The notes under the pieces were generated by a model. That model was not told the origin of the DNA. It saw only the letters and a program-made list of their open reading frames with translations, and made no database searches. Of a stretch of 64,000 nucleotides of DNA, positions 23,507 through 55,766 are shown one piece after another. The position numbers and the translations under genes are program-made. The stretch lies in IMG/VR virus record IMGVR_UViG_3300047095_000752, positions 62,001 through 126,000 of that record; one strand, written 5' to 3'. Within the stretch, counting starts at the first letter, position 1, and each line of letters starts with the position of its first letter.

Positions 23507-24664
23507 TTAATCAGTGAGTTTGCCTTTAAACCATTCCATGAACTCTTCTTGGTCGTATTTACCGGACTTCTGTCCATTCTCTTCTCTTGGTATTATTCTC
23601 AAGTTTTCTCTTAAATTGCAAATATTTTTTACTATTAGAGGACCATGAATATTATCTAGATCATTATCTATAAAAGCTTTACGGGGGAATATGTGATCTA
23701 CCGTGTAATCAGATCTATCCCATATATTACTTGATGCCTTGGCGACTTTTTGGGATTGGATGTGATTATTGTAGTTTGGATCGTCTTTTAATATATGTAG
23801 TTTACCATAATCAAACCCAAGATATGTCATTCTTAGAATACGGGTTCGATCTGGGTTAAATCTTGGATTGTTCTCACCTCTAACTTTATCATCTAAATAA
23901 CATTCCCGACACCGTTGTCCTATATTTTTAAAGTTATTAAATTTCATTTTAAATGTATGATTTCGGTCACATTTCATTATAAGGTATTTATGAGCATTTA
24001 TATATGTTTTACTTAATAAACTATAACCAAAACTTTCTATATGACTTTTAACGACTTCGTATTCGGGTCGAAATTTACCAAAACATTCTGGACATCGGTG
24101 ACCCACGTGAACAAACCCGACAAAACTCATTTCAAATATGTGATTATCCGGGCACTTGATTTTCATGTTTGTTTTATTGTTGATGTATTCTGTATCTAAC
24201 AGTAAATATCCTTCAACATTTATTTTAGACTTTACATAATTAAAATCATTTTTACGTTCCTGTGCAAATCGTATTGAGACGCACTTATTACATCGATTAT
24301 CCTGACTATAAAAACTGCTAAACCGTACCTTATATGTGTGGTCTGCGGGACATTTTATTGTTATTTTTGAGTTTACACCCTTATAATTTCCTATATCAAT
24401 TAATGTGTAACCATAGTCATTTAGTATTTTAGATATTTCATCAGATCCATGCTTGACCTCTTTCTTAATACATTTCTTACAACTAGTAGTCCGTCTAAAA
24501 TTATTATATGGTATCTCCGATATATTACCGCATGAGCATTTATATTTCATTTTGGTTTGTGTATTAATATATTCTTCTTTACTGACTAATAATACACAGT
24601 TTCGATCTAAATATGTTTGTAATACTTGTTCGTAGGGTACGGGTTTAGACATATGAATTTTCAT
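23507..24664 (-). CDS. HNH-family putative homing endonuclease with 4 zinc-ribbon repeats
   Basis: Repeats LLxxxYIN...KCxxxH.F...RCxxC; VDHIFP...NLRENLRII; likely start ATG 24664 (ORF track starts at 24778). Confidence 0.85.
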   Translation of the reverse strand: MKIHMSKPVPYEQVLQTYLDRNCVLLVSKEEYINTQTKMKYKCSCGNISEIPYNNFRRTTSCKKCIKKEVKHGSDEISKILNDYGYTLIDIGNYKGVNSKITIKCPADHTYKVRFSSFYSQDNRCNKCVSIRFAQERKNDFNYVKSKINVEGYLLLDTEYINNKTNMKIKCPDNHIFEMSFVGFVHVGHRCPECFGKFRPEYEVVKSHIESFGYSLLSKTYINAHKYLIMKCDRNHTFKMKFNNFKNIGQRCRECYLDDKVRGENNPRFNPDRTRILRMTYLGFDYGKLHILKDDPNYNNHIQSQKVAKASSNIWDRSDYTVDHIFPRKAFIDNDLDNIHGPLIVKNICNLRENLRIIPREENGQKSGKYDQEEFMEWFKGKLTD

Positions 24665-24723
24665 TCTAAAAATACCTACATGAACTTGTCGTGTAGGTAG
24701 TATATTTAATTTATTTATTTGAA

Positions 24724-26364
24724 CTAAGCTATGGTATAAGTGACACCATAATCTTTTAAACTTTCTTTTAATCCCCATTTATAAGCTAACACCATCAATA
24801 GGGGAAATTTGTAGGATCCCATGTACCCTATGAGGTATGCGCCGTTTTGGAGGAACTTACTGTGGATCTTCATGATCGAATACGATGATTCGAAGCGCCC
24901 TACGTTAATTGTGGGATAGAATATCGGATAACGTACGATCTGGTTGACTAGTATTTTCTGTTGTCCATTTATCACGAACGTTCCATTCGCAGTAAGATAC
25001 GGTAGGTCCACATGCACTTCGTGTATGTTACCCTCCGGATCTTTAAGTTGGATCTGGTAGCGCTCCTTGATCGATTGATATATCTCCGATGCTCCTGTAT
25101 GCACTTGTTTTACTTCCATACTCTTCAATTTCAGCGGAACATCTTTATCTTCGAGGAGTTTGAAGGCATCTGAGATATCATCTTTTAAATTAACTCTAAA
25201 ATCAGTCATACGTTTATTTAAAATATGTGCAGGGCTTTGATAATCTAAAAGCTTGGGTACATCGGCGGACTTAATGATCATATTCGTTGAAAAGTTTTTG
25301 GCAGGATCTCTTTTTAATAATTGAGTTACAAGTTTATTTATAATCTCAGCTTGCTTCTCAGGACTCTTCCGATCAATCTTCTTTGAAATTTCTTTAGCCT
25401 TCTCAAGATCACCCATAACGCTATAAACAACAGATCTTGTGATTAATTTATTATGATTTTCAAAATCTTTTTCGCGATCAATTGTAGAGTCAGCTTTTGT
25501 ATAGTTCTTAATAGCGTCCTGTACGATTTGTTCGTGCTGCTTACTTACGAGAGGAGATTCCTTAGTGGCTATTTGAGCTACTTCTTCAGCGTGATTTGAT
25601 TCCCCTGTGACTCCATCTGTATTTTGTTGTAGTCTTAATAGTATATTTTTAACTCGGACTAAACTATTATTTTTAGCTAAGACATCATACAGCTTTACGA
25701 AGCGCCCACCATCTTTATTATAAACGAACATTATAATTTTTTCGAATGGTATTGATTCTCTTTTACCAGCTTCTAACATTAATAACATATTAAAAAAGAT
25801 ATAACACTTCTTGTAGAATAGTTTATCGGATAAAGGCTTATCGACGTTCACGGCATATAACAAGATTGTTTCAAATTTATCTTTATCGATCTCACTAGCA
25901 GTTTCTAAATATTGATTATATAATTTAGATCCCTGACCTGTATCAAATCTTTTTGTACGATACATTAAGTCTACGGCGTTTAAATACCGTGTGGCATCGT
26001 AAAAGAAGTTGTATCCATTTACTTTAGTGTACTCACCGGGTCTACCTTTAATTGGTAGGAGGTCTCGATCTTTAATTAATTTTGTATATTCTGGGGTGAG
26101 ATATGATTGTGGTCTTGTTATGGTAGGTACAAAAACATATCGAGCATATTGCTTTTTGAAATTTAAAAAGTTATAGGTCTCTAATAAATTTACATTTTCA
26201 CCATAGAAATAAAAACATAAGTTCTTTTTACTATTTGGATCTTTTATTGGTATGACTAATTCATCATACGGTATAAAAAGCTTTTGGTTTAATAAATTCA
26301 TGTTGAGTACCTTATGTTCTTTAAATCCGGTATTGAAAATAATTGGGTTATTACGTAAACCCAA
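24724..26364 (-). CDS. rpoB: DNA-directed RNA polymerase beta subunit, N-terminal fragment with large N-terminal extension
   Basis: LPYLTANGTFVINGQQKILVNQIVRYP matches beta region IPLMTxxGTFxINGxERVxVSQLxRSP; likely start ATG 26301. Confidence 0.85.
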   Translation of the reverse strand: MGLRNNPIIFNTGFKEHKVLNMNLLNQKLFIPYDELVIPIKDPNSKKNLCFYFYGENVNLLETYNFLNFKKQYARYVFVPTITRPQSYLTPEYTKLIKDRDLLPIKGRPGEYTKVNGYNFFYDATRYLNAVDLMYRTKRFDTGQGSKLYNQYLETASEIDKDKFETILLYAVNVDKPLSDKLFYKKCYIFFNMLLMLEAGKRESIPFEKIIMFVYNKDGGRFVKLYDVLAKNNSLVRVKNILLRLQQNTDGVTGESNHAEEVAQIATKESPLVSKQHEQIVQDAIKNYTKADSTIDREKDFENHNKLITRSVVYSVMGDLEKAKEISKKIDRKSPEKQAEIINKLVTQLLKRDPAKNFSTNMIIKSADVPKLLDYQSPAHILNKRMTDFRVNLKDDISDAFKLLEDKDVPLKLKSMEVKQVHTGASEIYQSIKERYQIQLKDPEGNIHEVHVDLPYLTANGTFVINGQQKILVNQIVRYPIFYPTINVGRFESSYSIMKIHSKFLQNGAYLIGYMGSYKFPLLMVLAYKWGLKESLKDYGVTYTIA

Positions 26365-26399: not shown

Positions 26400-27827
26400 T
26401 TAAAATAGAATACCCTTTTGCATAGCATCCATAACCTGTGCCCGTTCGGACTGTAGTGAGCTTACACACTGGGGATCGCCTTGGCATTGTTGGAGTAGAC
26501 CATCTATATTGCTTAATTTCAGTTTATTCATATAATTGATACAAGCTTGTTGTTTACCGCCAGTTAAATTTGCACAACCTTGTTCAGTATACTTTTCCTG
26601 TTTACGAGCTTGATGTCTTTTCCATAGTATTGAAGCTGCAGTACCGGCGGCGGCGAGACCACCGGCAACAGCAGTCGCCGTTTGTGCTGTTGGGGACATT
26701 TGTTTATATCCATTTATAACGGCATTAGCACCATTTTTAGCCCGTTGCATTATACTTGGACCCTTGGGTTCTTCCGGTGTACCCCTAACCATATTAGCCA
26801 GATCATAATATGTATATCCGGCTACACCCATACCTGCAGTCGCTCTAAGTGGTTTACGCATTAAATTACGGCCAGCTCCAGTCAATGAGTTACCGACCCA
26901 TTTTGGGGCGACTCCAGATTTAGCAACGGCGGCTCCACCTTTTCTAAGCCCTAATCCAGCCATTTTAGGTAGGAATCTGGCAGCCGCACCAATAGCAGCC
27001 CCAATTTCATTAAATGTATATACGCCATCAACCCAAGGTGAATAATAAGATTCTTCAAAGTTCATAGCCTCAGACATCTCATCTTCATCAAACTCATTGG
27101 CTACAAAATTAACAGGGGTATCGACTGTAGCCTTGTCTAAAATAGATGGTTTAGAACTTGTTATAATACTTCTAATCTTATTAATATTAGTATTTACACC
27201 TTTTTGATATAATAGCTTGTATTCTTTAGTTCCATTCTTAGGTGAATACTCACAATATATAATCTTATCGAATGGGACTTCGGAGTCAATGTTCTTAATA
27301 TTTTTAATCATAGCTAAATATAATGGTAGAATCTTTTTAGTTAATAACTTTTCGGAAAATTCCAAATCTGTATTTAATGTATATAATAATACTTTTTCGG
27401 AGTTACTCGGTGAATTATTACATAATAATTTAAAATATGAACTCATCAATTCTCTAAACTTCTGATGATTGAATACAGTGATATTGTACCTGTCAATGAT
27501 AGCATCAAAATATCGATTAGCGTCTATATAGGTGTGAAATTTATCGAAGTCTTTTAGCTCGTTCAAGTTAGCTTTAATAGGTACAAAACCAGCATCTTTT
27601 ATACCGACCTTGTAATCTGAATTCATATAGGTTCGGAACGGGGCTGGAGATGTGGGTACAACATACTTACGTATACCGTTACCTGTAAATTTAGACCCTT
27701 TTATTGCAGAAAGAGTATCTTCGTTTTCACTTAACACCATTATTGACAGTAGCTTACCACCAACTGGGGATGTGGTTACACTTATGTCATTATATGAAAT
27801 GTAGGGTTTAATTGATGAATATATCAT
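26400..27827 (-). CDS. Putative internal virion protein (N-domain shared with RNAP beta-N; Ala/Gly-rich, Cys-rich C-terminus)
   Basis: Manual alignment to both neighbours; function inferred. Confidence 0.55.
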   Translation of the reverse strand: MIYSSIKPYISYNDISVTTSPVGGKLLSIMVLSENEDTLSAIKGSKFTGNGIRKYVVPTSPAPFRTYMNSDYKVGIKDAGFVPIKANLNELKDFDKFHTYIDANRYFDAIIDRYNITVFNHQKFRELMSSYFKLLCNNSPSNSEKVLLYTLNTDLEFSEKLLTKKILPLYLAMIKNIKNIDSEVPFDKIIYCEYSPKNGTKEYKLLYQKGVNTNINKIRSIITSSKPSILDKATVDTPVNFVANEFDEDEMSEAMNFEESYYSPWVDGVYTFNEIGAAIGAAARFLPKMAGLGLRKGGAAVAKSGVAPKWVGNSLTGAGRNLMRKPLRATAGMGVAGYTYYDLANMVRGTPEEPKGPSIMQRAKNGANAVINGYKQMSPTAQTATAVAGGLAAAGTAASILWKRHQARKQEKYTEQGCANLTGGKQQACINYMNKLKLSNIDGLLQQCQGDPQCVSSLQSERAQVMDAMQKGILF

Positions 27828-27833
27828 TATTTA

Positions 27834-31512: not shown

Positions 31513-32337
31513 TTATTTCAATAATTTAATTTCATCTATAATTTTACTTTTAAACCATTTTAAAAATTTCTCTTTGTTGTACTTATCAAATTTCTTCATA
31601 TTTTCCGAATGTAGAAGTAATTGTAGATTGTCTCGTGTATTAGCTATTTTTCGAACTATTTGTTCCGTATGAATTTTTTCCGATAAAATTTTAGAAAATG
31701 CGCAAATCGGAAAAATATGATCTACATTATAATCTCCGGGATTTATTAAAAAATTGTTATAATTCGGATCATCTTTCATATTTTTAATAATCCATCGTAT
31801 TTTCTTTTTTCGTCTTAATTTGGAGTTTGATGTAACTTCGTCTCGAATTGGATTAAAATTATAATGATTTGTACCCGATCTATTTTTTGACATTCTTTCT
31901 TTAAAACATTCTATACAAATTTTATAACGATCCAATCGATTGGAATATGGGTGTCCTTTTTGACACACGAAATCTAATTTTTGCCGGTATCCCTCATATA
32001 TTTCTGATGTGCAAATTATGTTATCTTTTTTACACATCTCTTTAATTTGATTTAATTTTTTGACTTTAAGTATCACTTTATTACTTTTTATTTTTTCTAA
32101 CGTTTTAGATTTTATTATACTTTTATTTTCTAGTTTAATTTCTTTATTACAAACTTTACAACAATTTCTTTTTCTTTTTATAAGATCTTTATACGTTTTT
32201 TGCTGTAAATGCCCATCGGGACACAAACAATCCATATGGTGGGTGGTTCCATTATAGTGTTGATCTAATAAAACCCACCCCAAATCAAAAAATGCTTTAT
32301 CTACAATTGATATATCTATCTTAGATTTATTTTTCAT
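31513..32337 (-). CDS. HNH-family putative homing endonuclease
   Basis: CPDGH...CKVC, GTNHYNFNP, KDDPNYNN, VDHIFP, NLQLL...NMKK; third paralog of 18427 and 23507. Confidence 0.8.
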   Translation of the reverse strand: MKNKSKIDISIVDKAFFDLGWVLLDQHYNGTTHHMDCLCPDGHLQQKTYKDLIKRKRNCCKVCNKEIKLENKSIIKSKTLEKIKSNKVILKVKKLNQIKEMCKKDNIICTSEIYEGYRQKLDFVCQKGHPYSNRLDRYKICIECFKERMSKNRSGTNHYNFNPIRDEVTSNSKLRRKKKIRWIIKNMKDDPNYNNFLINPGDYNVDHIFPICAFSKILSEKIHTEQIVRKIANTRDNLQLLLHSENMKKFDKYNKEKFLKWFKSKIIDEIKLLK

Positions 32338-44012: not shown

Positions 44013-44180
44013 CTATTTTCTATTTTTATCAAGCCACTCTTTTAGTTCATCTTCGGAATACCGTATACAACTACCAATTATCATATGTGGTATTTCCTTA
44101 TTTTCTCGGAGTTTACATAGTGTACTTTTTGATACACTTAGCCATTCAGACACTTCGGATTCGGTCAACATTTTTTTCAT
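44013..44180 (-). CDS. Excisionase-family (HTH_17) small DNA-binding protein, 55 aa (not in ORF track)
   Basis: MKKMLTESEVSEWLSVSKSTLCKLRENKEIPHMIIGSCIRYSEDELKEWL; AAGGA RBS. Confidence 0.85.
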   Translation of the reverse strand: MKKMLTESEVSEWLSVSKSTLCKLRENKEIPHMIIGSCIRYSEDELKEWLDKNRK

Positions 44181-44193
44181 TATGAGATTCCTT

Positions 44194-44607
44194 TTAGTTT
44201 TCGGTGGTGTTTATCGTGAATTGTTCTAAGAGATTAAGTACTTCTAAAGCCTCTTCAAACCTTAATGCTGGGTGTTCAGATCTATGTTTAGTTCTAACTC
44301 CCGTTATTTCAACCTTATGTAAATAGCGGTGCCCATCCCAATGGAATTCATAAAATATTTTTTCTTTTTCAACTTCATCGTATCTCGCATTATCCCTCAA
44401 AAATTTATTTACGGAATTCATAAACTTTTCTTTTTTCTTATATTTCCATATAATGAATATACCTAAGCTTAGATTGTGACCTGATTTTAACATATCGCCC
44501 CCTAAAATTTCATTGACTTTATGGTATTTTTCTAATATCTCACGTAACAAAATAGTTCGTTTTTCCAAGTCTTTTAATAGCCGTTCTATGGCTCGTCCGG
44601 ATTTCAT
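44194..44607 (-). CDS. Hypothetical protein
   Basis: 137 aa, AAGGA RBS. Confidence 0.65.
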   Translation of the reverse strand: MKSGRAIERLLKDLEKRTILLREILEKYHKVNEILGGDMLKSGHNLSLGIFIIWKYKKKEKFMNSVNKFLRDNARYDEVEKEKIFYEFHWDGHRYLHKVEITGVRTKHRSEHPALRFEEALEVLNLLEQFTINTTEN

Positions 44608-44622: not shown

Positions 44623-45699
44623 TTAAGGTTGAATATAAAATCCGAAATAAAATATTGTACATAACATGAGTATAAATGATATGAATATAAATACTGTGTC
44701 GAAGTATATATGTGGTTTGATAAACTCTTTAAACTTATGAAATAAATCATCAACCTCATCTACAATATCTGTTAGAATTGTATTATTCCCTATATATTTT
44801 GTAGCTTGATATGTAGGTTCTCGGACTATTATCGGAGTCTGTACTATCATGGGATCCGGAGTCTGTAACTTATAATCGTTATTCATATTTCGAATCATAT
44901 GAGCGATATTATCATCACTTTCATTTGCGATCCATTTTATAATCTGTTCAACTTCGGCTATAGCACAGTCCATGCGTTCTTTTGTTTCAACATGTATTGA
45001 TTTAAAAGTTGTTTCGGTATTTGTTGGTGTCATTGTAAAGCTAGATATATATGGTTTAACATTGAGTATCGACTTTATGATAGTTATTTTATCGGCTGTT
45101 ATATCACCATCTGTATGAATTGTTCGATTACTAGGTAACGGTGGGGGTAAATCCGACCTATTATAATTCGTATATGATGGATTTCTATGATATTGTTTTA
45201 AATCATTTACTAAGCTACTTATACTAAAATTTTCATCTACATAATAATATTTATGACTCCCTTCAACAATTTCAATATATTGTATAAGGTCATCATGATA
45301 ATACTGATATGCCTGTGATGGTGAGTATGACCAATCTATATTATCATTATCTAGACATTTTAATATAGGTCTAGTTTCGAATATAAAACATTCATTCGTA
45401 TCACCCACAAAACATGATGTTGGTAATGGATCATCTGAATACTTCGTCTGTAGCTGTTTTAAATAAAATATACATTGTATTATAACGGATTGTCTATTTG
45501 ATGCTTTTGTAAAATCTTTTTTGTATTTAACTTCTATTAGACAATGGACGCCATCGCCTTTCATTAAGCCGTCTGATATACATGGAGAAGTTATAATACA
45601 ATTATCTAAATTATTATAAAACATTGTTCTATATGCGGATTCTACATCCTTCTCAGCATGTGCCACATCTAGTTGTTTCATTAATTGTTTTGCATTCAT
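44623..45699 (-). CDS. PD-(D/E)XK nuclease-domain protein with C-terminal transmembrane helix
   Basis: SDG...LIEVK...IIQCIFYL aligns with the N-terminus of 46148-48583; C-terminal FIFISFILMLCTIFYFGFYI; start MNAKQL. Confidence 0.75.
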   Translation of the reverse strand: MNAKQLMKQLDVAHAEKDVESAYRTMFYNNLDNCIITSPCISDGLMKGDGVHCLIEVKYKKDFTKASNRQSVIIQCIFYLKQLQTKYSDDPLPTSCFVGDTNECFIFETRPILKCLDNDNIDWSYSPSQAYQYYHDDLIQYIEIVEGSHKYYYVDENFSISSLVNDLKQYHRNPSYTNYNRSDLPPPLPSNRTIHTDGDITADKITIIKSILNVKPYISSFTMTPTNTETTFKSIHVETKERMDCAIAEVEQIIKWIANESDDNIAHMIRNMNNDYKLQTPDPMIVQTPIIVREPTYQATKYIGNNTILTDIVDEVDDLFHKFKEFIKPHIYFDTVFIFISFILMLCTIFYFGFYIQP

Positions 45700-45730
45700 T
45701 ATAAACAAACTCCAAAATAAAATGCAGTAA

Positions 45731-46144
45731 TCAACATTCCCAATCAAAATCCGAGTCATCAGTATCATCTGATTTATTTATTGTATTTGATTTTACATTT
45801 TGTCTAAGTTTATATAAAATAGAAACCCATATCCAACATATCCAACATATCCATAATAATAAAATGGGGGGTCCGAAAAGCTTTTCTTCAACTATATCTA
45901 ATGCGCCAAACGTAAAAGATAGAATAATTAAAACTATTAATGATATAATTTTCAGTGTAGTACTTTTAGCACATTTTTCATATATATTATAATTAGAATT
46001 TAAGTCCTCTGTTATATCAATTACGAATTTAATTAATATACCAAGTACAGCAACTATTAAAACTATAATAGCTATTGGTGGAGATAATATAAATACAATT
46101 ATAAATAAAAATAAACACCCCAGAAGAGCACATATTTCAATCAT
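45731..46144 (-). CDS. Integral membrane protein (about 4 TM)
   Basis: Four hydrophobic segments, acidic tail. Confidence 0.7.
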   Translation of the reverse strand: MIEICALLGCLFLFIIVFILSPPIAIIVLIVAVLGILIKFVIDITEDLNSNYNIYEKCAKSTTLKIISLIVLIILSFTFGALDIVEEKLFGPPILLLWICWICWIWVSILYKLRQNVKSNTINKSDDTDDSDFDWEC

Positions 46145-46147
46145 TAT

Positions 46148-48583
46148 TCATTTCCTTAAGAACCCAAGTTCATAGACCATTGGAATCATACGTTGTTCAA
46201 ATGCCTTGTACTGGTCTCTAAAGGCTTTGAACTCTTCCGCATAATACTTCTTCCATACGAGCTTTAGCTGGGCGTAGCCACTGTCCCAGCTATCCAGATG
46301 GTAGTCCGGATGTGATTGTGACATCAACTTGCGAACAGCCATAGACTTCAACAATAACTCTGTGGCTGCATCCAATACTTCGCGAGCATCTTGTGATAGC
46401 TCTATATCTTTTAGTTTATTATATACGAATCTTTCTTGTTTATTATTTTTGACATCTTTATAAAGACTATCATAATTAGCATTATTTGCCGCCTCCATTA
46501 TTTGATCTGTTGATAGCCAGAAGAATTCGTTTTTAATATCCCATAGTTTATCTTTATATGTTATTTGACGTAGGGATGATTGTTGGGAAGAATTATTGAA
46601 AAGTGAATATACAATAGAGTCATTTACAAATTGTTGCCATTCCGGGTGGTCTTCATTCGGAGCTATATATTCGTCTTTATCATTAATCCAAGTGCCTTTA
46701 ATGGATTTTCTTGCTGTGAACAATGTAGTCACTTTATAAAAGTTTTCATTCATAATCGAGAACCCATTACCTTTGGATGAGCAACTTGAAAATAAAGCGA
46801 CTCCACATGAATTTTCATATGCATTATTTGAAGTGTTTAACATATAACCCATATTATTATCTAAAGATGTTCCATAGCCGGTCTGTTTAATTTTCATGGA
46901 GCTACTTAGATATGGAAAATCTTTTTTAACTTTATTTTTTAAATTTTCTCGAACCCAATCACTACATGGCTTTAAATTATCTAAATTGTATAAAGATTTC
47001 CTACTAATACTTGATATACCGGTGTAAATTATATCCTTAATGTCGCTATTAAATTCATTATTTATAGTTTTTCCACTTTTCCATATACTGAAATCAATTC
47101 CCCAAGATTCCGCTGTGTCTGAAAAATGATTTGCGCAAAATAACATACTATATATAAATTCAAATTTATTTAAAAATTTTTCTCTAAATTTATTAAATGA
47201 TGGGCTTGTCTTGTATGATGATTTGGCGAATACTACTATAGTTATATTATTATTTATATTCAATTTATATATTCTATATAAGAATTGTGTGTATAAATTT
47301 TGGGCAGATTTACCCCATCCTTCTTCTATCATTTTTTTATTTAGTTTTGTATTTGCAACACCATCTTTATGTGAACCGTTCGATTTCATCATATTCCCCT
47401 GCCGAGCATAAGGAGGATTGATAAAAAACAGTATTTCTTTACCTTCCTTTAATGAAGATTTAAGTCTATCGGGTAGTTTTCTACCTTCATCATTCAAAAA
47501 GTCAAATTGAAATATCGTAGCATTTGAATTATACCCCATATCTTTAATTGTATCTATATCAGACTGTTCCAAAGTCGATAGATACAATTCTTTGAAATTA
47601 TAGTCCCGAGTTAAATTGGCAGATCCACATGCACAGTCCCATACGATATAGCGATCTTTCCAGTCTTCGCCGAGATGATTTGAAATCTCTTTATGTGCTT
47701 CGTCGGCCCAGACGGCGGGAGTGAAAAACTCTCCCTTGCGCCTACGAGTCTCGTCTTCAATTAATCTATCCCCATATGCAGTCAATTCTTCTTTTTCATT
47801 TGGTGTATAATTAATACCTTCGTATTTCTTAAAAAACGATTTAAATTCTTTTACTTTAACATTCCCATAATTTTTAGTAAAAAGAATAGTGGGGTTATTA
47901 GAATTGAGACCGTTTTCATCTGAATTTATAAGCAATTGTAGAAACAAATTAACCCGTTGATTGATAGATAATTTACAAGGGCTAGACTTTGTATCTACAA
48001 GGATTTCTTTATCGAATATATCAAAAGCCGCAACAATGTTTTTATTGTTGATTTTTACTTTAGTCAAATCACCGGAGTGGATCTTAATCAAAGTATCAAC
48101 TACATCATTAAGCTTAAATTTATCATCTATGAAATAGCAAAATGAATTATATTCTTGTATGTCAATATCTTCTGAGAGTTCAACCATAAGCTCAGGGTTG
48201 TTCATATGGGCAGTAGATGCCGAACCCTTGATATCTTTATTCAAATACTTCTTTAGAACCTTAGCGTCTAAAATAAAGCATTCGTCATTATCACCGATAA
48301 ATATGGAGGTTGGTAAAGCTTTACCATTTTTATGAAAATCTTGTAGATAATACAAGCACTGTATAAGGACAGTTACTCGGTCTTCGATTTTCTTAAAGTT
48401 TAGATCTCGCTTGAATTCCAATAATGAAAAAATATTATCACCAATGATAATACCATCCATATTTTGTTCGCGAGTTATCTGGATATCCTTTTCTTTTTTG
48501 AATAGCTTATCAAAATATTTCTTGTAAACCATTTCAATGTCGGATTCATTCTTCGTTTTTTGCAGGTCTGCGTATAGGCTCAT
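46148..48583 (-). CDS. Type IIG-like restriction-modification fusion (PD-(D/E)XK nuclease + N6-adenine methyltransferase + TRD)
   Basis: MDG...LLEFK; GEFFTP; WDCACGSANL; INPPY. Confidence 0.85.
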   Translation of the reverse strand: MSLYADLQKTKNESDIEMVYKKYFDKLFKKEKDIQITREQNMDGIIIGDNIFSLLEFKRDLNFKKIEDRVTVLIQCLYYLQDFHKNGKALPTSIFIGDNDECFILDAKVLKKYLNKDIKGSASTAHMNNPELMVELSEDIDIQEYNSFCYFIDDKFKLNDVVDTLIKIHSGDLTKVKINNKNIVAAFDIFDKEILVDTKSSPCKLSINQRVNLFLQLLINSDENGLNSNNPTILFTKNYGNVKVKEFKSFFKKYEGINYTPNEKEELTAYGDRLIEDETRRRKGEFFTPAVWADEAHKEISNHLGEDWKDRYIVWDCACGSANLTRDYNFKELYLSTLEQSDIDTIKDMGYNSNATIFQFDFLNDEGRKLPDRLKSSLKEGKEILFFINPPYARQGNMMKSNGSHKDGVANTKLNKKMIEEGWGKSAQNLYTQFLYRIYKLNINNNITIVVFAKSSYKTSPSFNKFREKFLNKFEFIYSMLFCANHFSDTAESWGIDFSIWKSGKTINNEFNSDIKDIIYTGISSISRKSLYNLDNLKPCSDWVRENLKNKVKKDFPYLSSSMKIKQTGYGTSLDNNMGYMLNTSNNAYENSCGVALFSSCSSKGNGFSIMNENFYKVTTLFTARKSIKGTWINDKDEYIAPNEDHPEWQQFVNDSIVYSLFNNSSQQSSLRQITYKDKLWDIKNEFFWLSTDQIMEAANNANYDSLYKDVKNNKQERFVYNKLKDIELSQDAREVLDAATELLLKSMAVRKLMSQSHPDYHLDSWDSGYAQLKLVWKKYYAEEFKAFRDQYKAFEQRMIPMVYELGFLRK

Positions 48584-50692: not shown

Positions 50693-53600
50693 TTAATTCC
50701 TTTGTAGGTTCAGGTGCTTTGAAATCGTTAATCTAAATGCTGGGATATAAGACGGATTTAGATTACGAAGGTCGGCGATTTCCGTCTGGATTTTTATATA
50801 ATGCTCGTTGCCGTCATCCCCATATAAAGTGTATTTATAATAAAACGGGGAATTGAAAAATCTTTTCATATGAGTTGTTACTGGTAAATCTCTTAAGTAA
50901 ACCCTATAATATTGGGTTATTATCTTTGGTTTTATAACATATAATAGTTCATATACTTTAAACATGGAATCTGTAAATAATTTTATAATTTTAGAATACT
51001 TTTTAATATCGGAAGAAGTCATCATACAATTTTGGACTCGATGCTGTGAATTTTATCTCTGATGTTGTATATGCACGTGCGCCCCACGAGAAAAACTTAG
51101 AATGTACTACCCATATATTTGCTATTCCAATTACCTTCTGTAACATGGTTGACGAATATGTTATTGATCGATTTATAGATTGGCTTGTATTTAAGAAATA
51201 ATCATTCTTGATATAAACTCTATTGTATTGTATGAATATTCCTGCTTTCTTCCCTATCACGTGTATAATAGATTGCGCCCGACATAATAATTCATTGTAT
51301 ACCCGTAGTGGAAGTTTATGGAGCATCATTCTTCATCATCTCCATAATCATCGAATTCGTCGATTTCATCGTATTGTGCCGCAACCCCATTATAATATTT
51401 TGTTTTATTATATGAATCTTGATAGTCCATGAAAAATGCCTTAAATAACTGACTAAATTCATCCGTGTATCCATGTTCACCTCGTCCGCCGGTATAATTG
51501 AAAAACATTATAAACACAAATGAACTATACCCCAATCCAAATATATTTATCGTTTGAGACTTTTCCCGTAAAAAATCAAATATTTTATTCACATCATTGT
51601 ATAATACAGAGTGTACAGACGTATTTATATAAGATCCTAGACTACAGGTTCGACTTAATATGAACTGGAAAACATCCATCAGAAATCCTATACGCACACA
51701 AAGTTCGTACATAGGACTACACCTACCCTCGTCATTACAACACGCGACGATATACGTTTCATGCAATGAGGCGTGTGGATCTGGATAGTACTCGCTTTTT
51801 AGTAAATTCTTGATATAATCTCTAAAACAAAATCCATCGAGAGTTGTCTGGTGCCTTCCGTTGAGTTGCACTATCATTCGGGTACGCTCCAAGTCTTTCG
51901 GGTCAACGTAGTGTCCTTAGTGTAGATAATCTCGTAATGTAACTCCAAAGTGTTATACGACTGATCATCATATGAACCCTTCAACCGTAGTATATTCAAT
52001 TTATTATACGCTGCAAATAAATAATCGTGATCTCCATGCGGGGGTTCTTCCTTAACTTGGCATATCGTATAGGGGGTTGAATTTAAATCTATAGTTAGAC
52101 CCACATCTTTATTTTTTATAGGAGATTTGTTGTATGTTGGAGCCATATAATACATATAAGTCGGTAGGGCTATATATTTCAACTTAGGTGTACAGCGGTA
52201 TAATAAATAGAAAAGCCCCGTTATAAGTTTTTCTATTTTGAGTGCAAATTGTTTACACATCATTTGATAGCTTCGGATGCGAATGTAATTTGACTAAATT
52301 TTGTATGGACAGTTTTATCAAATTTGTTGGGAGAACCACTATATTTGAATATACTAAATAATGTAAGTTTGAAGTTAGATATATTCATAATTTGAGTGCC
52401 AGACCATGCTATATCACTCGATATAAAATTTGTATTAACAATCAACTTATAGTCATCCAAGCCCGAATCTAATGTAAAGTCATAATACGATCTATTATTA
52501 TGTAAGGAGGGCTGCAAAGTTCTATACATATACCCTGATATCGCTATTATGTCGACGTTAAGTTCTCGTAATAAACTCAAAATTTCACATATCGAATTCT
52601 CTAACTTTAGTATCATGCTTTACCTTTCGGTCTAGTTGTGTGTAACTGGGTATACGATAAAGATATATCACCACCGTCATCCTCGGCGGATACTAATTTA
52701 AATATAGTCAGTCTACATTTGTTTATATAAATATTTTCAAACCTTGATTTTTGACCATGATTAATTTTTGGTATGTATTCAAATCTAGTCATTATATATC
52801 GTATACTATCATTTATATTGAATGATACGTGGAATTCGTTATAATTGTCTGGTGTTGATGTGTATGATGGACTCATATAATACAAAAATGAATGAAAGCA
52901 TATACACTCCATCGGTCTTTTAATGCTTAACATTCTGAATATGGTCACTATACAATTCTCGATTAATTCTGGTATATGATTCATTTGTATTTAATAAGGA
53001 TAGGGTTGATCATACAGTCAAATGCTTTTTGGTCTAATACAAATAACTTGGGGGGTTCACTATCCGGTCCAACCTCGAATATCGGGCATTTTACGCATGA
53101 CATGTGATAAATAATATTTGATGTACCCTCGATTCTTTTGTAAAAGTCCACTTCATCATTTGTGTTGAATACGTAATCTATAAGGTCCCAATAGAGCGAC
53201 GGATCCCCAGTTCTATACAGGTAGTTTGGAATATGTATATATTTAGGTTTAAATTTTAATATTAAATTTAATATTTTACAAATCGAAACTTCAACGTAAT
53301 GAATAGGGTCAGTCGTTGCCATTGTTAAATCCTTTTTTAAGAGTTGGAATATCAACCGAATCAAAAATGTATATTGGGTATGGTGAATGTGAGAATTTAT
53401 TTAAATTGAATTTAAATAATGTATTTTTACCAGTACTCCTATATACTTCGTTGAGGTCATTGGGTTTCATGTTGTACATTTTTCTGGGTGGGTTATCAAC
53501 TCCGAATCCACTGGAGTCTATATAGTAGTTCGTAGTTCGCCTCCATATATAACAAGGTGTAAATAACACGAAGGGTCGTACACCAGAACTTCCTAATTTC

Positions 53601-55727
53601 GATTTAACTATTAATATAAGGGTAGATGATATTGCAGATTCTATCATGTCGATGAAATCCATAGTTAACATCTATAACCTCCTGTCGGTAAGATTTGATG
53701 TTATTCGGATATCAGCGTAACCCTTCTTTATATTTACATAATATAAATTGTTGGCATTTGATAGCCCATTAAAATAAATCAGTTTTAGATTATCTACTAT
53801 ATAGTTTTTTGGTCTAGGTGGGCTATAAATGAGTATGTCACCAACACCATCGATACGATATGGTTCAAACATTAAGGTATTGACTATAAAATGAACATGC
53901 CGATCATGTACACTTGATGCGGCTGGTGCATATGCTACTAAATTTAAGTACAAAAGTGAATTCCTAATATCATATAAATTAAAAATAGTTTTTATTATTG
54001 TCATTACCGCTGGTATGGATGCTGATATATAATTTCTGGTGCTACTCATGGCATTCTCTATAATCGTATATTTCGATTCCGCGCCCCATAAATGAAATTG
54101 AGAATAAAGTTGGCTTGTGAATAAATGCTACCGCTAAGTCGACCTTTGTGTCAAAGTCGAATCCTAACGTCATAGTGGTTGAGGCATACGGTTTATATCT
54201 GTATATATCGGGAGTTAAGCTAACTTCAACATACCCTAAAAAACTTTTACAACAATCATGGACGGCGTATCTATACATAGAATCGCAGTATATGTCAGTA
54301 ACCTTTCTACTCTGCACTAAATATGACATCAAATGACTACATAATGTTATAACGAATTTACGTTTAAATATTTTACATAATATACACAGAACACTACACA
54401 CACTATATTCTATTTTTCGAACTAACACGAGATTCAATTCAATATCCTTTCGTGGTTTTACTCTCTTGTTAAAATATATATAGTGAGTGTTTTAATATAC
54501 ACTGAGTGTTAGATGTAACCTGTCGGTCAAGGGTGAACCACTGTATTCATAGTCCAAATGTAATATATCCGACTTGTGAATATTAAATACATTTATTTCA
54601 TTATTGACGTTAGTTGTATATGTTTTGTATGACTTTATTTGGTCATATACTTTAAGTGAAATTAACGGCTCTCTGTATAATGTCATATAATTATCAAAAC
54701 CGTCCAGATCAGTTTGCGAAGAAAAGAATACTAAATTCTGAGACTTCATATCGATTGAACATATATCTTTTGGCTTACATATAATATGATAAAAAAGAAC
54801 AAAAGATTTGGATATTGAGTTTTCAATTTTAGCATATAAGTCCCGTATAAAATCTTCAGCCATACGCATATTGTTACCTCCCTTAAGTTCGATTACAAAA
54901 ATAAATATCATAAGGTATGATATCAATAATTAATATATATAATTAAAAATCACTTACCAAAATTAATGGTAAGTGATTTAATGTAGGACTTTTAACTTAT
55001 ATTAGAATGCTGTATATTCCTCGATGGGTATTATGTCGAAGTGAGCGCTACGAGGAAATGATAACCCTATTATATGCCTTTTGTGTATACATGTTTTGAA
55101 ATCGGGAGTTTGGCATGGGTAGTAATTAAAATCTTTCAGAAAAATTGTCAAACCTTCGAATAAAGGGGTGTCATCAGACCATCTAACTTTTTGTATATAT
55201 CTCGGATACAAAACCGAATAATGACCATCTAAAATTAATGGGTTGTATGTGAATATGTATATTATTTCACCAATTGGATCTAGGATACGACGTAATAATT
55301 TAAAAAGTATAGGTACACATTTTAAATACAGGTCGCTTATCAATTGCTTCAGTCTCCGGTTTGTTAACATCTAAAATGCGTTATAATCACAAAGTTTTAT
55401 CATTTCAAATGACGTGTCATCCACCCTTTTTATTCCTATTAAATTCTTCTTACGGACCAGCATTCTATAGTCTTCTCGACCCGTTTCGTAATCGTTAAAA
55501 TCTTGAGCCGAAAATGTCGTATAATAATTTGTATATAATTCTAGACCCCACAGTACCTTATCTTTATGTTTCGGGTATACAATTGAGGTATGGCAATATA
55601 TAGTAATAGGGTTTGTAACAAATATGTATGTGACTTTATTTATGGGTTGTATAATATTTCTAATTAAATGAAATAATAATTCTATTTTATGTGCTATTTG
55701 AGTGTATTTGTCAAAGTCTTCGTTCAT
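50693..55727 (-). CDS. Tandem array of ~12 short paralogous hypothetical ORFs (108-144 aa) plus one unrelated ORF (51326-51892)
   Basis: ORFs at 50693, 51003, 51874, 52260, 52613, 52981, 53309, 53672, 54042, 54492, 55002, 55371; KIExxIxxI(L/F)xxL...I..PxYxY pattern; coupled stops/starts. Confidence 0.65.
54924..54979 (-). promoter_or_regulatory. Terminator + AT-rich promoter-like motif
   Basis: AAATCACTTACCA/TGGTAAGTGATTT stem abutting CAATAATTAATATATATAAT. Confidence 0.65.
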
Positions 55728-55766
55728 TTGATTTCCTGAAGTTTAAGATTAAACCATTCTATGAAT

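What the first reader, a model, noticed from the sequence alone, without database searches (positions are those of the whole stretch)
44623..48583. Type IIG-like R-M enzyme followed by a membrane protein and a membrane-anchored duplicate of its nuclease domain
Seen: the first ~170 aa of 46148-48583 (ESDIE..Y / DG...LLEFK / VLIQCLYYL / LPTSIFIGDNDECF / YFIDDKF) align with 44623-45699 (EKDVE..Y / DG...LIEVK / VIIQCIFYL / LPTSCFVGDTNECF / YYVDENF). The catalytic D and ExK are intact in both. The copy lacks the methylase and TRD and ends in a TM helix; a 4-TM gene lies between them. Inference: a phage-encoded superinfection-exclusion or competitor-restriction module with a nuclease tethered at the DNA entry site, possibly activated by pairing with the R-M enzyme.
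Basis: partly seen in the sequence, partly recalled or inferred. Interest (0 to 1): 0.7.

Follow-up and report, generated by a model that had tools for sequence, protein, structure and literature searches.

The report
Phage restriction enzyme plus membrane-anchored nuclease copy
A giant freshwater phage carries a combined DNA-cutting and DNA-marking enzyme, followed by a small membrane protein and a second, membrane-anchored copy of only the cutting domain; that copy is kept intact by selection and probably cuts DNA at the cell membrane.

Summary
Gene A (46148-48583, minus strand, 811 aa) and gene C (44623-45699, 358 aa) share a ~165-residue N-terminal domain (31% identity, BLASTP E 9e-19; profile-profile E 1.5e-35). 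D43, E56 and K58 are intact in both. C ends in a hydrophobic helix, and gene B (45731-46144, 137 aa) has four hydrophobic segments.

No sequence library names A. Its confident model (pLDDT 86.8) matches single-chain Type IIG/IIL enzymes (DrdV, BpuSI, MmeI, M.TaqI). It belongs to a family of more than 844 proteins on huge-phage contigs, whose recognition domain is the most variable part.

C is rare, with five relatives. Its nuclease domain is under purifying selection (dN/dS 0.11), its tail is invariant and its middle is hypervariable.

The idea that C must pair with A has no support:
- About 90 other A loci lack C.
- Near-identical C sits beside A alleles only 41% identical in that domain.
- A complete 167 kb phage has a 197-aa anchored nuclease (P0242) but no A.
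- The complex prediction gave no answer.

Best reading (about 0.4): C is a self-standing nuclease facing the cytoplasm at the membrane, acting on incoming DNA. This resembles bacterial SNIPE but uses a different fold. All function is inferred.

The parts
46148..48583 (-). Gene A: single-chain Type IIG/IIL-like restriction-modification enzyme, 811 aa
   Evidence: ORF. AlphaFold model with pLDDT 86.8. Best PDB matches are DrdV, BpuSI, BsaXI, MmeI and M.TaqI. More than 844 homologues on huge-phage contigs.
48059..48583 (-). A residues 1-175: PD-(D/E)xK nuclease domain (D43, E56, K58, Q75, D98, E101)
   Evidence: These residues are invariant in 47 family members. The model aligns from residue 1 to the N-terminal part of DrdV. 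Codons checked.
47729..48058 (-). A residues 176-285: linker domain of helices and a small sheet between nuclease and methyltransferase
   Evidence: Secondary structure of the model. Mean pairwise identity in the family is 0.60.
47099..47728 (-). A residues 286-495: gamma-class N6-adenine methyltransferase (motif I VWDCACGSANL at 314-324, motif IV NPPY at 389-392)
   Evidence: VIA-align Z 17.5 to M.TaqI starting at model residue 286. D316, G320, N389, P390 and P391 are invariant. Codons checked.
46514..47098 (-). A residues 496-690: target-recognition domain; the first part (496-612) is the most variable region of the family
   Evidence: Mean pairwise identity is 0.34 for 496-612, against 0.52-0.67 for the other domains. 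The region aligns with the recognition domains of M.TaqI, CamA and M.BseCI. Many lineages split the gene at this border.
46151..46513 (-). A residues 691-811: conserved C-terminal helical domain
   Evidence: Model helices 692-805. Alignments to CamA and M.BseCI run to model residue 807. Mean pairwise identity 0.61.
45731..46144 (-). Gene B: 137-aa membrane protein with four hydrophobic segments and an acidic C-terminal tail (SDDTDDSDFDWEC); its ATG lies 3 nt after the stop of A
   Evidence: Hydropathy, junction. Only two homologues, 76-80% identical. Absent between A and C in L005.
44623..45699 (-). Gene C: tail-anchored nuclease-only paralogue of A, 358 aa
   Evidence: It is the only tail-anchored ORF of 150 aa or more found in the 245 kb contig by my hydropathy criteria.
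45175..45699 (-). C residues 1-175: PD-(D/E)xK nuclease domain (D43, E56, K58, Q75, D100, E103)
   Evidence: pLDDT above 92. Best PDB matches are the nuclease domains of BpuSI (Z 9.3) and DrdV (Z 9.2). dN/dS is 0.11 against L003. Codons checked.
44716..45174 (-). C residues 176-328: hypervariable middle, with a small ferredoxin-like domain (about 186-262), disordered linkers and a helix before the anchor
   Evidence: 53% identity and dN/dS 0.38 against L003. Different length and sequence in P0126. In other lake runs 44814-45171 is replaced by 329 unrelated letters. Fold matches are generic, Z 7-8.
44626..44715 (-). C residues 329-358: C-terminal transmembrane anchor (PHIYFDTVFIFISFILMLCTIFYFGFYIQP)
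   Evidence: Hydropathy and model helix 329-355. The last 17 residues are invariant in all six family members. 100% amino-acid identity against L003 despite dS 0.77.

Best explanation
Shown by computation:
- The window is part of a 245 kb freshwater huge-phage contig.
- Gene A encodes a single-chain Type IIG/IIL-like enzyme. In order it has a PD-ExK nuclease domain, a linker, a gamma-class N6-adenine methyltransferase with NPPY, a variable target-recognition domain and a conserved helical C-terminus.
- Gene C encodes a copy of only the nuclease domain with every catalytic residue kept. This is followed by a fast-evolving middle region and an invariant C-terminal transmembrane helix.
- Gene B encodes a small four-segment membrane protein that is found only in part of the clade.

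Inferred:
- C has no signal peptide. It has lysines just before a helix that ends three residues from the C-terminus. So it should be tail-anchored, with the nuclease in the cytoplasm against the inner face of the membrane.
- I propose that C works on its own, probably as a homodimer, as a nuclease with little or no sequence specificity. The anchor would keep it away from the replicating phage genome and restrict it to DNA crossing or touching the membrane, such as the incoming genomes of competing phages.
- The variable middle region would be the part that engages changing targets or partners.
- A would act separately, as a sequence-specific restriction enzyme that methylates the phage's own DNA and cuts unmodified host or competitor DNA.
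- Together they would give two layers of competitor exclusion. B would be an optional membrane accessory.
For: A:
- The model has pLDDT 86.8. Foldseek matches are DrdV at E 3e-11, then BpuSI, BsaXI, MmeI and LlaBIII.
- VIA-align gives Z 18.5 to DrdV over model residues 1-585 and Z 17.5 to M.TaqI.
- D43, E56, K58, D316, G320 and NPP are invariant. The recognition domain is the most variable part. Other lineages split the gene at the methyltransferase/recognition border.

C:
- Homology to A. Nuclease-domain matches to BpuSI and DrdV and to the N-termini of Type IIS/IIG proteins in AlphaFold DB.
- The catalytic residues are invariant, even in P0126 at 38% identity.
- dN/dS is 0.11 in the nuclease domain. 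The anchor is 100% conserved at dS 0.77. The middle has dN/dS 0.38 and is replaced in other strains.

Independence from A:
- P0242 is a 197-aa protein with the same domain, intact catalytic residues and a C-terminal transmembrane helix. It lies in a 167 kb phage rated 100% complete whose only match to the A profile is P0242 itself.
- No second nuclease domain occurs in 76 viral and 11 genome loci that carry A.
- B and C have dS of about 0.3 between the window and L003, while A has dS above 2.

Precedent from the literature:
- SNIPE is anchored in the membrane with a cytoplasmic nuclease. It cleaves phage DNA during injection, is toxic without its anchor, and has a conserved nuclease with variable targeting regions (PMC13190303).
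- Jumbo-phage fusions of a modification enzyme to an REase domain have been proposed to attack host or superinfecting DNA (PMC7824862).
Against: - No activity, localisation or phenotype has been measured. Topology and membrane insertion rest on hydropathy and a model.
- The isolated nuclease domain has no recognisable DNA-binding or targeting module, and the N-domain of C carries a net charge of -7. How it would find DNA is open.
- The nuclease domains of MmeI-type enzymes are inactive until they pair (PMC2582602). A lone copy may therefore be inactive without a partner.
- The conserved adjacency to A in all C-bearing contigs may mean a functional link after all.
- The host is unknown.
- The AU test does not reject a single origin of C and P0242 (p 0.43). 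Recurrent evolution of the anchored form is therefore not shown.
Confidence: 0.4

Rival explanations
1. C is a trans-acting catalytic subunit of A. MmeI-type enzymes have one catalytic site per chain and must pair two nuclease domains to cut both strands. C would supply the second nuclease domain to DNA-bound A. This would work as the small subunits of the heterodimeric enzymes BspD6I, BtsI and BsrDI do. Double-strand cutting would then occur only at the membrane.
For: - C is homologous to the nuclease domain of A and is encoded in the same co-directional gene array in every C-bearing contig.
- The MmeI requirement for pairing is documented (PMC2582602).
- Heterodimeric enzymes with large and small subunits exist (PMC1950550, PMC3017599).
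- The small subunit of R.BspD6I appears among the fold matches of C at Z 6.3.
Against: - A complete phage has an anchored nuclease-only protein and no A.
- About 90 A loci work without C.
- C that is 93% identical pairs with A nuclease domains only 41% identical to each other.
- The C domain is not the closest relative of its resident A domain.
- The complex prediction scored 0.00, which the tool says is no evidence either way.
Confidence: 0.2
2. C is a regulator of A rather than an enzyme in its own right. It would act as a decoy nuclease domain that binds A's nuclease domain. That would hold A at the membrane, or poison its dimerisation, to protect newly replicated phage DNA that is not yet methylated.
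For: Paralogy and adjacency. Pairing between nuclease domains is part of the mechanism of this enzyme class (PMC2582602).
Against: - All catalytic residues of C are invariant and the domain has dN/dS 0.11. A pure decoy would not need them.
- The anchored form exists without A.
- Most A-bearing phages do without it.
Confidence: 0.1
3. B and C serve host takeover or lysis rather than competition. This could be degradation of membrane-attached host DNA, or a holin-like role for B with C as a passenger.
For: B is a small protein with four hydrophobic segments and a charged C-terminus, which is holin-like in shape only. Phages commonly degrade host DNA (general knowledge).
Against: - No endolysin or spanin genes were seen beside these genes.
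- B is absent in the L005 lineage and next to P0242.
- Nothing explains why a host-DNA nuclease should be anchored.
Confidence: 0.1
4. C is a decaying leftover of a partial duplication of A and has no function.
For: Narrow distribution, with six protein clusters in 5.8 billion and one further fragment in metagenome contigs. The middle region is variable.
Against: - The ORF is intact in all copies.
- dN/dS is 0.11 in the nuclease domain, and the anchor is invariant despite synonymous change.
- The catalytic residues are kept at 38% identity.
Confidence: 0.03

Closest known systems
MmeI / DrdV / BpuSI (single-chain Type IIG/IIL restriction-modification enzymes)
   Same: A has the same domain order as these enzymes: an N-terminal PD-ExK nuclease with D...ExK, a linker, a gamma-class N6-adenine methyltransferase with NPPY, a recognition domain and a C-terminal domain. 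They are the best structural matches of the A model. The variable recognition domain is as expected for this class.
   Different: There is no sequence-level match to any Pfam, NCBIfam, PADLOC or PDB entry. A is encoded by huge phages rather than bacteria and is unusually conserved over its full length, at 45-50% identity among the 120 best-scoring homologues. Its activity and recognition site are unknown.
Small subunits of heterodimeric Type IIS enzymes (R.BspD6I small subunit, BtsI and BsrDI A subunits)
   Same: C is a short catalytic-domain-only protein encoded beside a large site-recognising enzyme. PDB entry 2p14 is a weak fold match (Z 6.3).
   Different: C carries a membrane anchor and a variable middle domain. 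It is a paralogue of the large enzyme's own nuclease domain. Association with A is not shown, and a related anchored form exists without any large enzyme.
SNIPE (bacterial membrane-bound nuclease that cleaves phage DNA during injection; PMC13190303)
   Same: Both have a single-pass membrane anchor with a cytoplasmic nuclease. In both, the nuclease is the conserved part and the non-catalytic region is variable. The logic of telling self from non-self by location would also be the same.
   Different: SNIPE has an N-terminal anchor, a DUF4041 domain and a C-terminal GIY-YIG nuclease, and it is a host defence gene. C has the reverse order, a PD-ExK nuclease derived from a restriction enzyme and no DUF4041, and it is phage-encoded. 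C is an analogue, not a member.
Phage superinfection-exclusion membrane proteins (T4 Imm/Sp, P22 SieA, HK97 gp15; from general knowledge)
   Same: These are also phage-encoded membrane proteins proposed to act at DNA entry.
   Different: As far as I know, the known examples block injection and are not nucleases. C would destroy the incoming DNA instead.
Jumbo-phage Mom-REase fusions (Iyer et al. 2021, PMC7824862)
   Same: These are also modification enzymes fused to an REase-fold nuclease in jumbo phages. They are predicted to protect phage DNA while attacking host or superinfecting DNA.
   Different: The modification chemistry differs (momylation versus N6 methylation), and no separate anchored nuclease copy is described for them.

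Membership tests
Type IIG/IIL single-chain R-M enzymes (MmeI, DrdV, BpuSI) | N-terminal PD-(D/E)xK nuclease domain with the D...(D/E)xK motif | tested here: met
   A has D43-x12-E56-x-K58, invariant in 47 family members. The model aligns from residue 1 to DrdV. The paralogous domain in C matches the nuclease domains of BpuSI and DrdV at Z 9.2-9.3.
Type IIG/IIL single-chain R-M enzymes (MmeI, DrdV, BpuSI) | Gamma-class N6-adenine methyltransferase, with motif I before motif IV NPP(Y/F) | tested here: met
   Motif I VWDCACGSANL at 314-324 and NPPY at 389-392. D316, G320, N389, P390 and P391 are invariant. Z 17.5 to M.TaqI.
Type IIG/IIL single-chain R-M enzymes (MmeI, DrdV, BpuSI) | Target-recognition domain after the methyltransferase in the same chain, varying between relatives | tested here: met
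   Residues 496-612 have mean pairwise identity 0.34, against 0.52-0.67 elsewhere. The region aligns with the recognition domains of M.TaqI, CamA and M.BseCI.
Type IIG/IIL single-chain R-M enzymes (MmeI, DrdV, BpuSI) | Sequence-profile membership (Pfam MmeI_*, Eco57I, N6_Mtase, BpuSI_N) | tested here: not met
   No Pfam family at E up to 1 and nothing in NCBIfam, PADLOC or PDB sequences. One homologue, P0030, carries PF07669 Eco57I. A is therefore a distant branch recognised by fold only.
Type IIG/IIL single-chain R-M enzymes (MmeI, DrdV, BpuSI) | Site-specific methylation and cleavage at a fixed distance from the site | not testable with these tools
   This needs enzyme assays or methylome sequencing.
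Heterodimeric Type IIS enzyme, small catalytic subunit (BspD6I, BtsI, BsrDI type) | Short protein consisting of a catalytic domain only, without DNA recognition | tested here: met
   The only recognisable enzymatic domain of C is the nuclease domain.
Heterodimeric Type IIS enzyme, small catalytic subunit (BspD6I, BtsI, BsrDI type) | Physical association with, and dependence on, the large subunit | tested here: inconclusive
   The complex prediction scored 0.00 and gave the verdict 'no answer'. The distribution argues against dependence.
SNIPE family | DUF4041 domain plus GIY-YIG nuclease | tested here: not met
   C has a PD-ExK nuclease and no Pfam match at all. The SNIPE architecture is taken from PMC13190303.
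SNIPE family | Membrane anchor with the nuclease on the cytoplasmic side | tested here: met
   By prediction only. The hydrophobic helix spans 329-355, three residues from the C-terminus. There is no signal peptide, and lysines precede the helix.
SNIPE family | Cleaves incoming phage DNA during injection | not testable with these tools
   This needs infection assays.

The most novel reading that the evidence does not exclude
Huge phages have turned the nuclease domain of their own restriction enzyme into a tail-anchored 'gatekeeper' nuclease that destroys DNA entering an already infected cell. Location at the membrane, not sequence or methylation, would tell self from non-self. The hypervariable middle region would evolve to recognise the injection machinery of rival phages. 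This would be a phage-encoded counterpart of bacterial SNIPE with a different fold. It may have arisen more than once (the C family and P0242), although the AU test does not reject a single origin for the two.
Probability: 0.25. Interest if true: 0.8.

Novelty: new variant of a known kind. Interest (0 to 1): 0.55.

Why it matters
Gene A adds a very large, phage-borne and so far unnamed branch to the Type IIG/IIL enzymes. There are more than 844 proteins (528 clusters at 50% identity carry the nuclease domain), with variable recognition domains. Such enzymes are useful reagents and show that huge phages carry their own restriction systems.

Gene C is the more unusual part. It is a restriction-enzyme nuclease domain cut loose from all DNA recognition and fixed to the membrane by a tail anchor, and it is kept by selection. 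If it cuts incoming DNA, superinfection exclusion by phages would include a destructive, location-based mechanism like the one just found in bacteria (SNIPE). If it instead serves A as a subunit, it would be the first membrane-localised restriction complex of this class. Either result can be tested with ordinary expression, localisation and phage-challenge experiments.

Tried and rejected
Searches that found nothing or little:
- Sequence libraries (Pfam, PHROGs, NCBIfam, PADLOC, PDB sequences) gave nothing meaningful for A, B or C.
- blastn and tblastn against 50,697 GenBank phages found no match.
- Foldseek of the whole C model against PDB gave no hit at E <= 0.001. Only the second-look aligner and AlphaFold DB resolved the nuclease domain.
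- Scans for more C relatives found none in viral contigs and one fragment in metagenome contigs.
- The anchor, the middle region of C and B have no paralogues elsewhere in the 245 kb contig.
- The sigma-70 promoter and terminator scan was uninformative. There are no minus-strand terminators in the array, and the phage has its own RNA polymerase.
- No RNA run holds the region, so expression could not be checked.

Tests that gave no decision:
- The complex prediction of A with C(1-180) scored 0.00 with the verdict 'no answer', so I do not use it as evidence.
- C and P0242 lie apart in the free trees, but the AU test does not reject one clade (p 0.43). I therefore claim only that the anchored form exists without A, not that it arose twice.

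Ideas rejected:
- C is a recent tandem duplicate of the resident A. The C domain is nearer to other A lineages (41% to P0008/P0009 versus 31% to its own A) and sits on a long separate branch.
- The longer ORF start of C at 45768 is real.


Full report
**Setting.** The window is bases 62001-126000 of a 245,225-base virus record rated 78% complete. Nearly all genes lie on the minus strand. They include split RNA polymerase beta and beta' subunits, a gyrase B-like protein, an SbcC-like ATPase, a helicase and DUF7487. The sequence recurs in lake-water metagenomes. It is therefore a freshwater huge phage with an unknown host.

**The observation.**
A is 46148-48583 (811 aa), B is 45731-46144 (137 aa) and C is 44623-45699 (358 aa).
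- The genes are tightly packed on one strand. There are 3 nt between the stop of A and the ATG of B, and 31 nt between B and C.
- A residues 3-169 align with C residues 6-171 at 31% identity, E 9e-19. The family profiles match at E 1.5e-35, but only over this domain.
- These are the only two copies of the domain in the contig.
- D43, E56 and K58 stand at the same residue numbers in both proteins.
- C ends in a hydrophobic helix three residues from its C-terminus, and B has four hydrophobic segments.

**What A is.**
- No sequence library recognises A.
- A search of 5.8 billion proteins found more than 844 relatives of about 800 aa. The 120 best are 45-50% identical over the full length. Many lie on contigs of 100-330 kb, including the huge-phage record LR756498.1.
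- An alignment of 47 members (A1) has the following invariant residues: D43, E56, K58, Q75, D98 and E101 in the first domain; D316 and G320 in motif I; and N389, P390 and P391 in motif IV.
- The AlphaFold model is confident, with pLDDT 86.8.
- Its best PDB matches are the single-chain restriction-modification enzymes DrdV (E 3e-11), BpuSI, BsaXI, MmeI and LlaBIII, and the methyltransferases M.TaqI, CamA and M.BseCI.
- The second aligner gives Z 18.5 to DrdV over model residues 1-585. It gives Z 17.5 to M.TaqI over 286-655, and CamA/M.BseCI alignments run to residue 807.
- The first part of the recognition domain (496-612) is the least conserved region, with pairwise identity 0.34 against 0.52-0.67 elsewhere. 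That is the pattern expected if relatives recognise different sequences.
- Many lineages split the gene exactly at the methyltransferase/recognition border into two ORFs. Some lineages lack the nuclease domain altogether.
- A is thus a fold-level member of the Type IIG/IIL class, from a large uncharacterised branch that is almost entirely phage-borne. Only 11 loci were found in 185,579 species genomes, mostly MAG contigs. None were found in GenBank phages.

**What C is.**
- C has five relatives in the same database. Four are 70-75% identical. The fifth, P0126, is 429 aa and 38% identical.
- All relatives lie directly downstream of an A homologue. B lies between A and C in L003 and L004. In L005-L008 there is no B, and L005 has a hairpin in its place.
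- The model of residues 1-176 has pLDDT above 92. It matches the nuclease domains of BpuSI (Z 9.3) and DrdV (Z 9.2) best. In AlphaFold DB it matches the N-termini of proteins annotated as Type IIS/IIG enzymes.
- The catalytic residues are invariant across the C and A families.
- Comparison of the window with L003 gives three different regimes. The nuclease domain has dN/dS 0.11 at 93% identity. The middle has dN/dS 0.38 at 53% identity. The last 33 codons are 100% identical in protein although dS is 0.77.
- The last 17 residues are identical even in P0126.
- In other lake samples the middle of the gene (44814-45171) is replaced by 329 unrelated letters between conserved flanks.
- C is therefore a functional gene with a conserved nuclease, a conserved anchor and a fast-changing middle.
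- C has no signal peptide, and lysines lie just before a helix at the extreme C-terminus. The expected topology is tail-anchored with the nuclease in the cytoplasm. This is inference.

**Is C tied to A?** Several results argue against an obligate partnership.
- None of 76 viral loci, 11 genome loci or three further huge-phage loci that carry A has a second nuclease-domain ORF within 5-8 kb.
- An exhaustive profile search with the domain found 528 clusters. Among the 150 listed is P0242. This is a 197-aa protein with the domain, all catalytic residues and a C-terminal transmembrane helix of unrelated sequence.
- P0242 lies in a 167 kb phage with inverted terminal repeats, rated 100% complete. 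That phage's only match to the A profile is P0242 itself.
- Between the window and L003, B and C are close (dS about 0.3). A is saturated (dS above 2, 55% identity, 41% in the nuclease domain). The same C therefore sits beside very different A alleles.
- The C domain is closer to other A lineages than to its resident A and forms its own long branch.
- The complex prediction for A plus C(1-180) returned 'no answer' and is not used as evidence.
- In the free trees P0242 and C lie far apart. However, the AU test does not reject a single clade (p 0.43), so independent origin is suggested but not shown.

**Mechanism.**
- MmeI-type enzymes have one catalytic site per chain and must bring two nuclease domains together to cut both strands (PMC2582602). 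This makes a trans-acting extra domain an attractive idea. Heterodimeric enzymes with a small catalytic subunit are known (PMC1950550, PMC3017599). The distribution data above weigh against this for C.
- The pattern of conserved nuclease, variable non-catalytic region and membrane anchor is the pattern described for SNIPE. SNIPE is a bacterial nuclease held at the inner membrane. It cleaves phage DNA during injection and is toxic when released from the membrane (PMC13190303).
- Jumbo-phage fusions of a modification enzyme with an REase domain have already been proposed to attack host or superinfecting DNA (PMC7824862).
- My best reading, at about 0.4, is that C is a self-standing, location-restricted nuclease acting on DNA at the membrane, and that A is a separate sequence-specific layer.
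- The rivals are a subunit of A (0.2), a regulator of A (0.1), host takeover or lysis (0.1) and a functionless remnant (0.03).
- Open problems are how a bare nuclease domain with net negative charge finds DNA, and whether it is active without a partner.

**Novelty and score.**
- A is a new, very large phage branch of a known enzyme class.
- C is a new variant: a restriction-enzyme nuclease domain released from DNA recognition and tail-anchored to the membrane, encoded by a phage. I found no description of such a protein in the papers searched.
- The function is untested, the family is rare and the three-gene linkage is not general. I score interest at 0.55.

Noticed in passing
L053-L059, L067, L020, L064, L084 (about codon 500 of the A homologue): In many lineages the A-family gene is split into two ORFs exactly at the methyltransferase/recognition-domain border, just after the 'WGISFTIW' motif. 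The second ORF is in another frame in some lineages and in the same frame after stops in others. This gives a two-gene form with an RM part and an S-like part. About 20 clusters of roughly 500 aa end at this point.
   Followed up: partly
L037:5959-8429 and L017:5845-8325: In L037 the nuclease domain is a separate 169-aa ORF and the rest of the enzyme follows in another frame. In L017 there is a single in-frame TGA at codon 328. I did not resolve whether these are real fission, a frameshift or a sequencing error.
   Followed up: no
L041, L046, L063, L068, L071, L085: Relatives of A that match only from about residue 275 onward, with 4.8-6 kb of upstream DNA present and no nuclease domain found there. 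These are methyltransferase-plus-recognition forms without the nuclease.
   Followed up: partly
P0135 (326 aa) and P0191 (595 aa): The same nuclease domain is fused to other C-terminal parts. P0135 has short helical repeats of the 'VRYALARN...PE' type. P0191 has a long region without NPPY. The domain appears to be a mobile module in these phages.
   Followed up: no
window 44814-45171 (middle of gene C): Contigs from two other lake-water runs keep both flanks but carry 329 unrelated letters in place of these 356 bases. The middle of C behaves like an exchangeable cassette.
   Followed up: partly
window 44623-48583 versus L003:1847-5845: The region is a mosaic. B and C are close between the two contigs (dS about 0.3) while the adjacent A genes are saturated (dS above 2). 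The genes flanking the module also differ between the window, L003 and L005.
   Followed up: partly
L005:4596-4662: A GC-rich inverted repeat (AACCCCACT...AGTGGGGTT) followed by an AT-rich run lies between A and C, where gene B sits in the window.
   Followed up: no
window 44013-44607: The two genes after C are a 137-aa protein and a 55-aa protein; in the L005-L008 lineage the 56-aa protein at the matching position carries HTH_17. Both are conserved in the same order after C in that lineage, but not in L003, where a small membrane protein follows instead.
   Followed up: no
window 23510-24778 / 31516-32337; 24727-26364 / 26403-27830; 55005-55370 / 55374-55742; 51877-53400: These are the other paralogue pairs or small gene clusters within the window at BLASTP E<1e-4. 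The first pair involves the CapR-domain protein.
   Followed up: no
L094 (Clostridium aquiflavi strain 5 N-1 scaffold of 111,676 bases): This is the only isolate genome among the 11 genome loci with an A homologue (39% identity, full length). It may be a prophage or phage-plasmid and could give a culturable entry point to the family.
   Followed up: no
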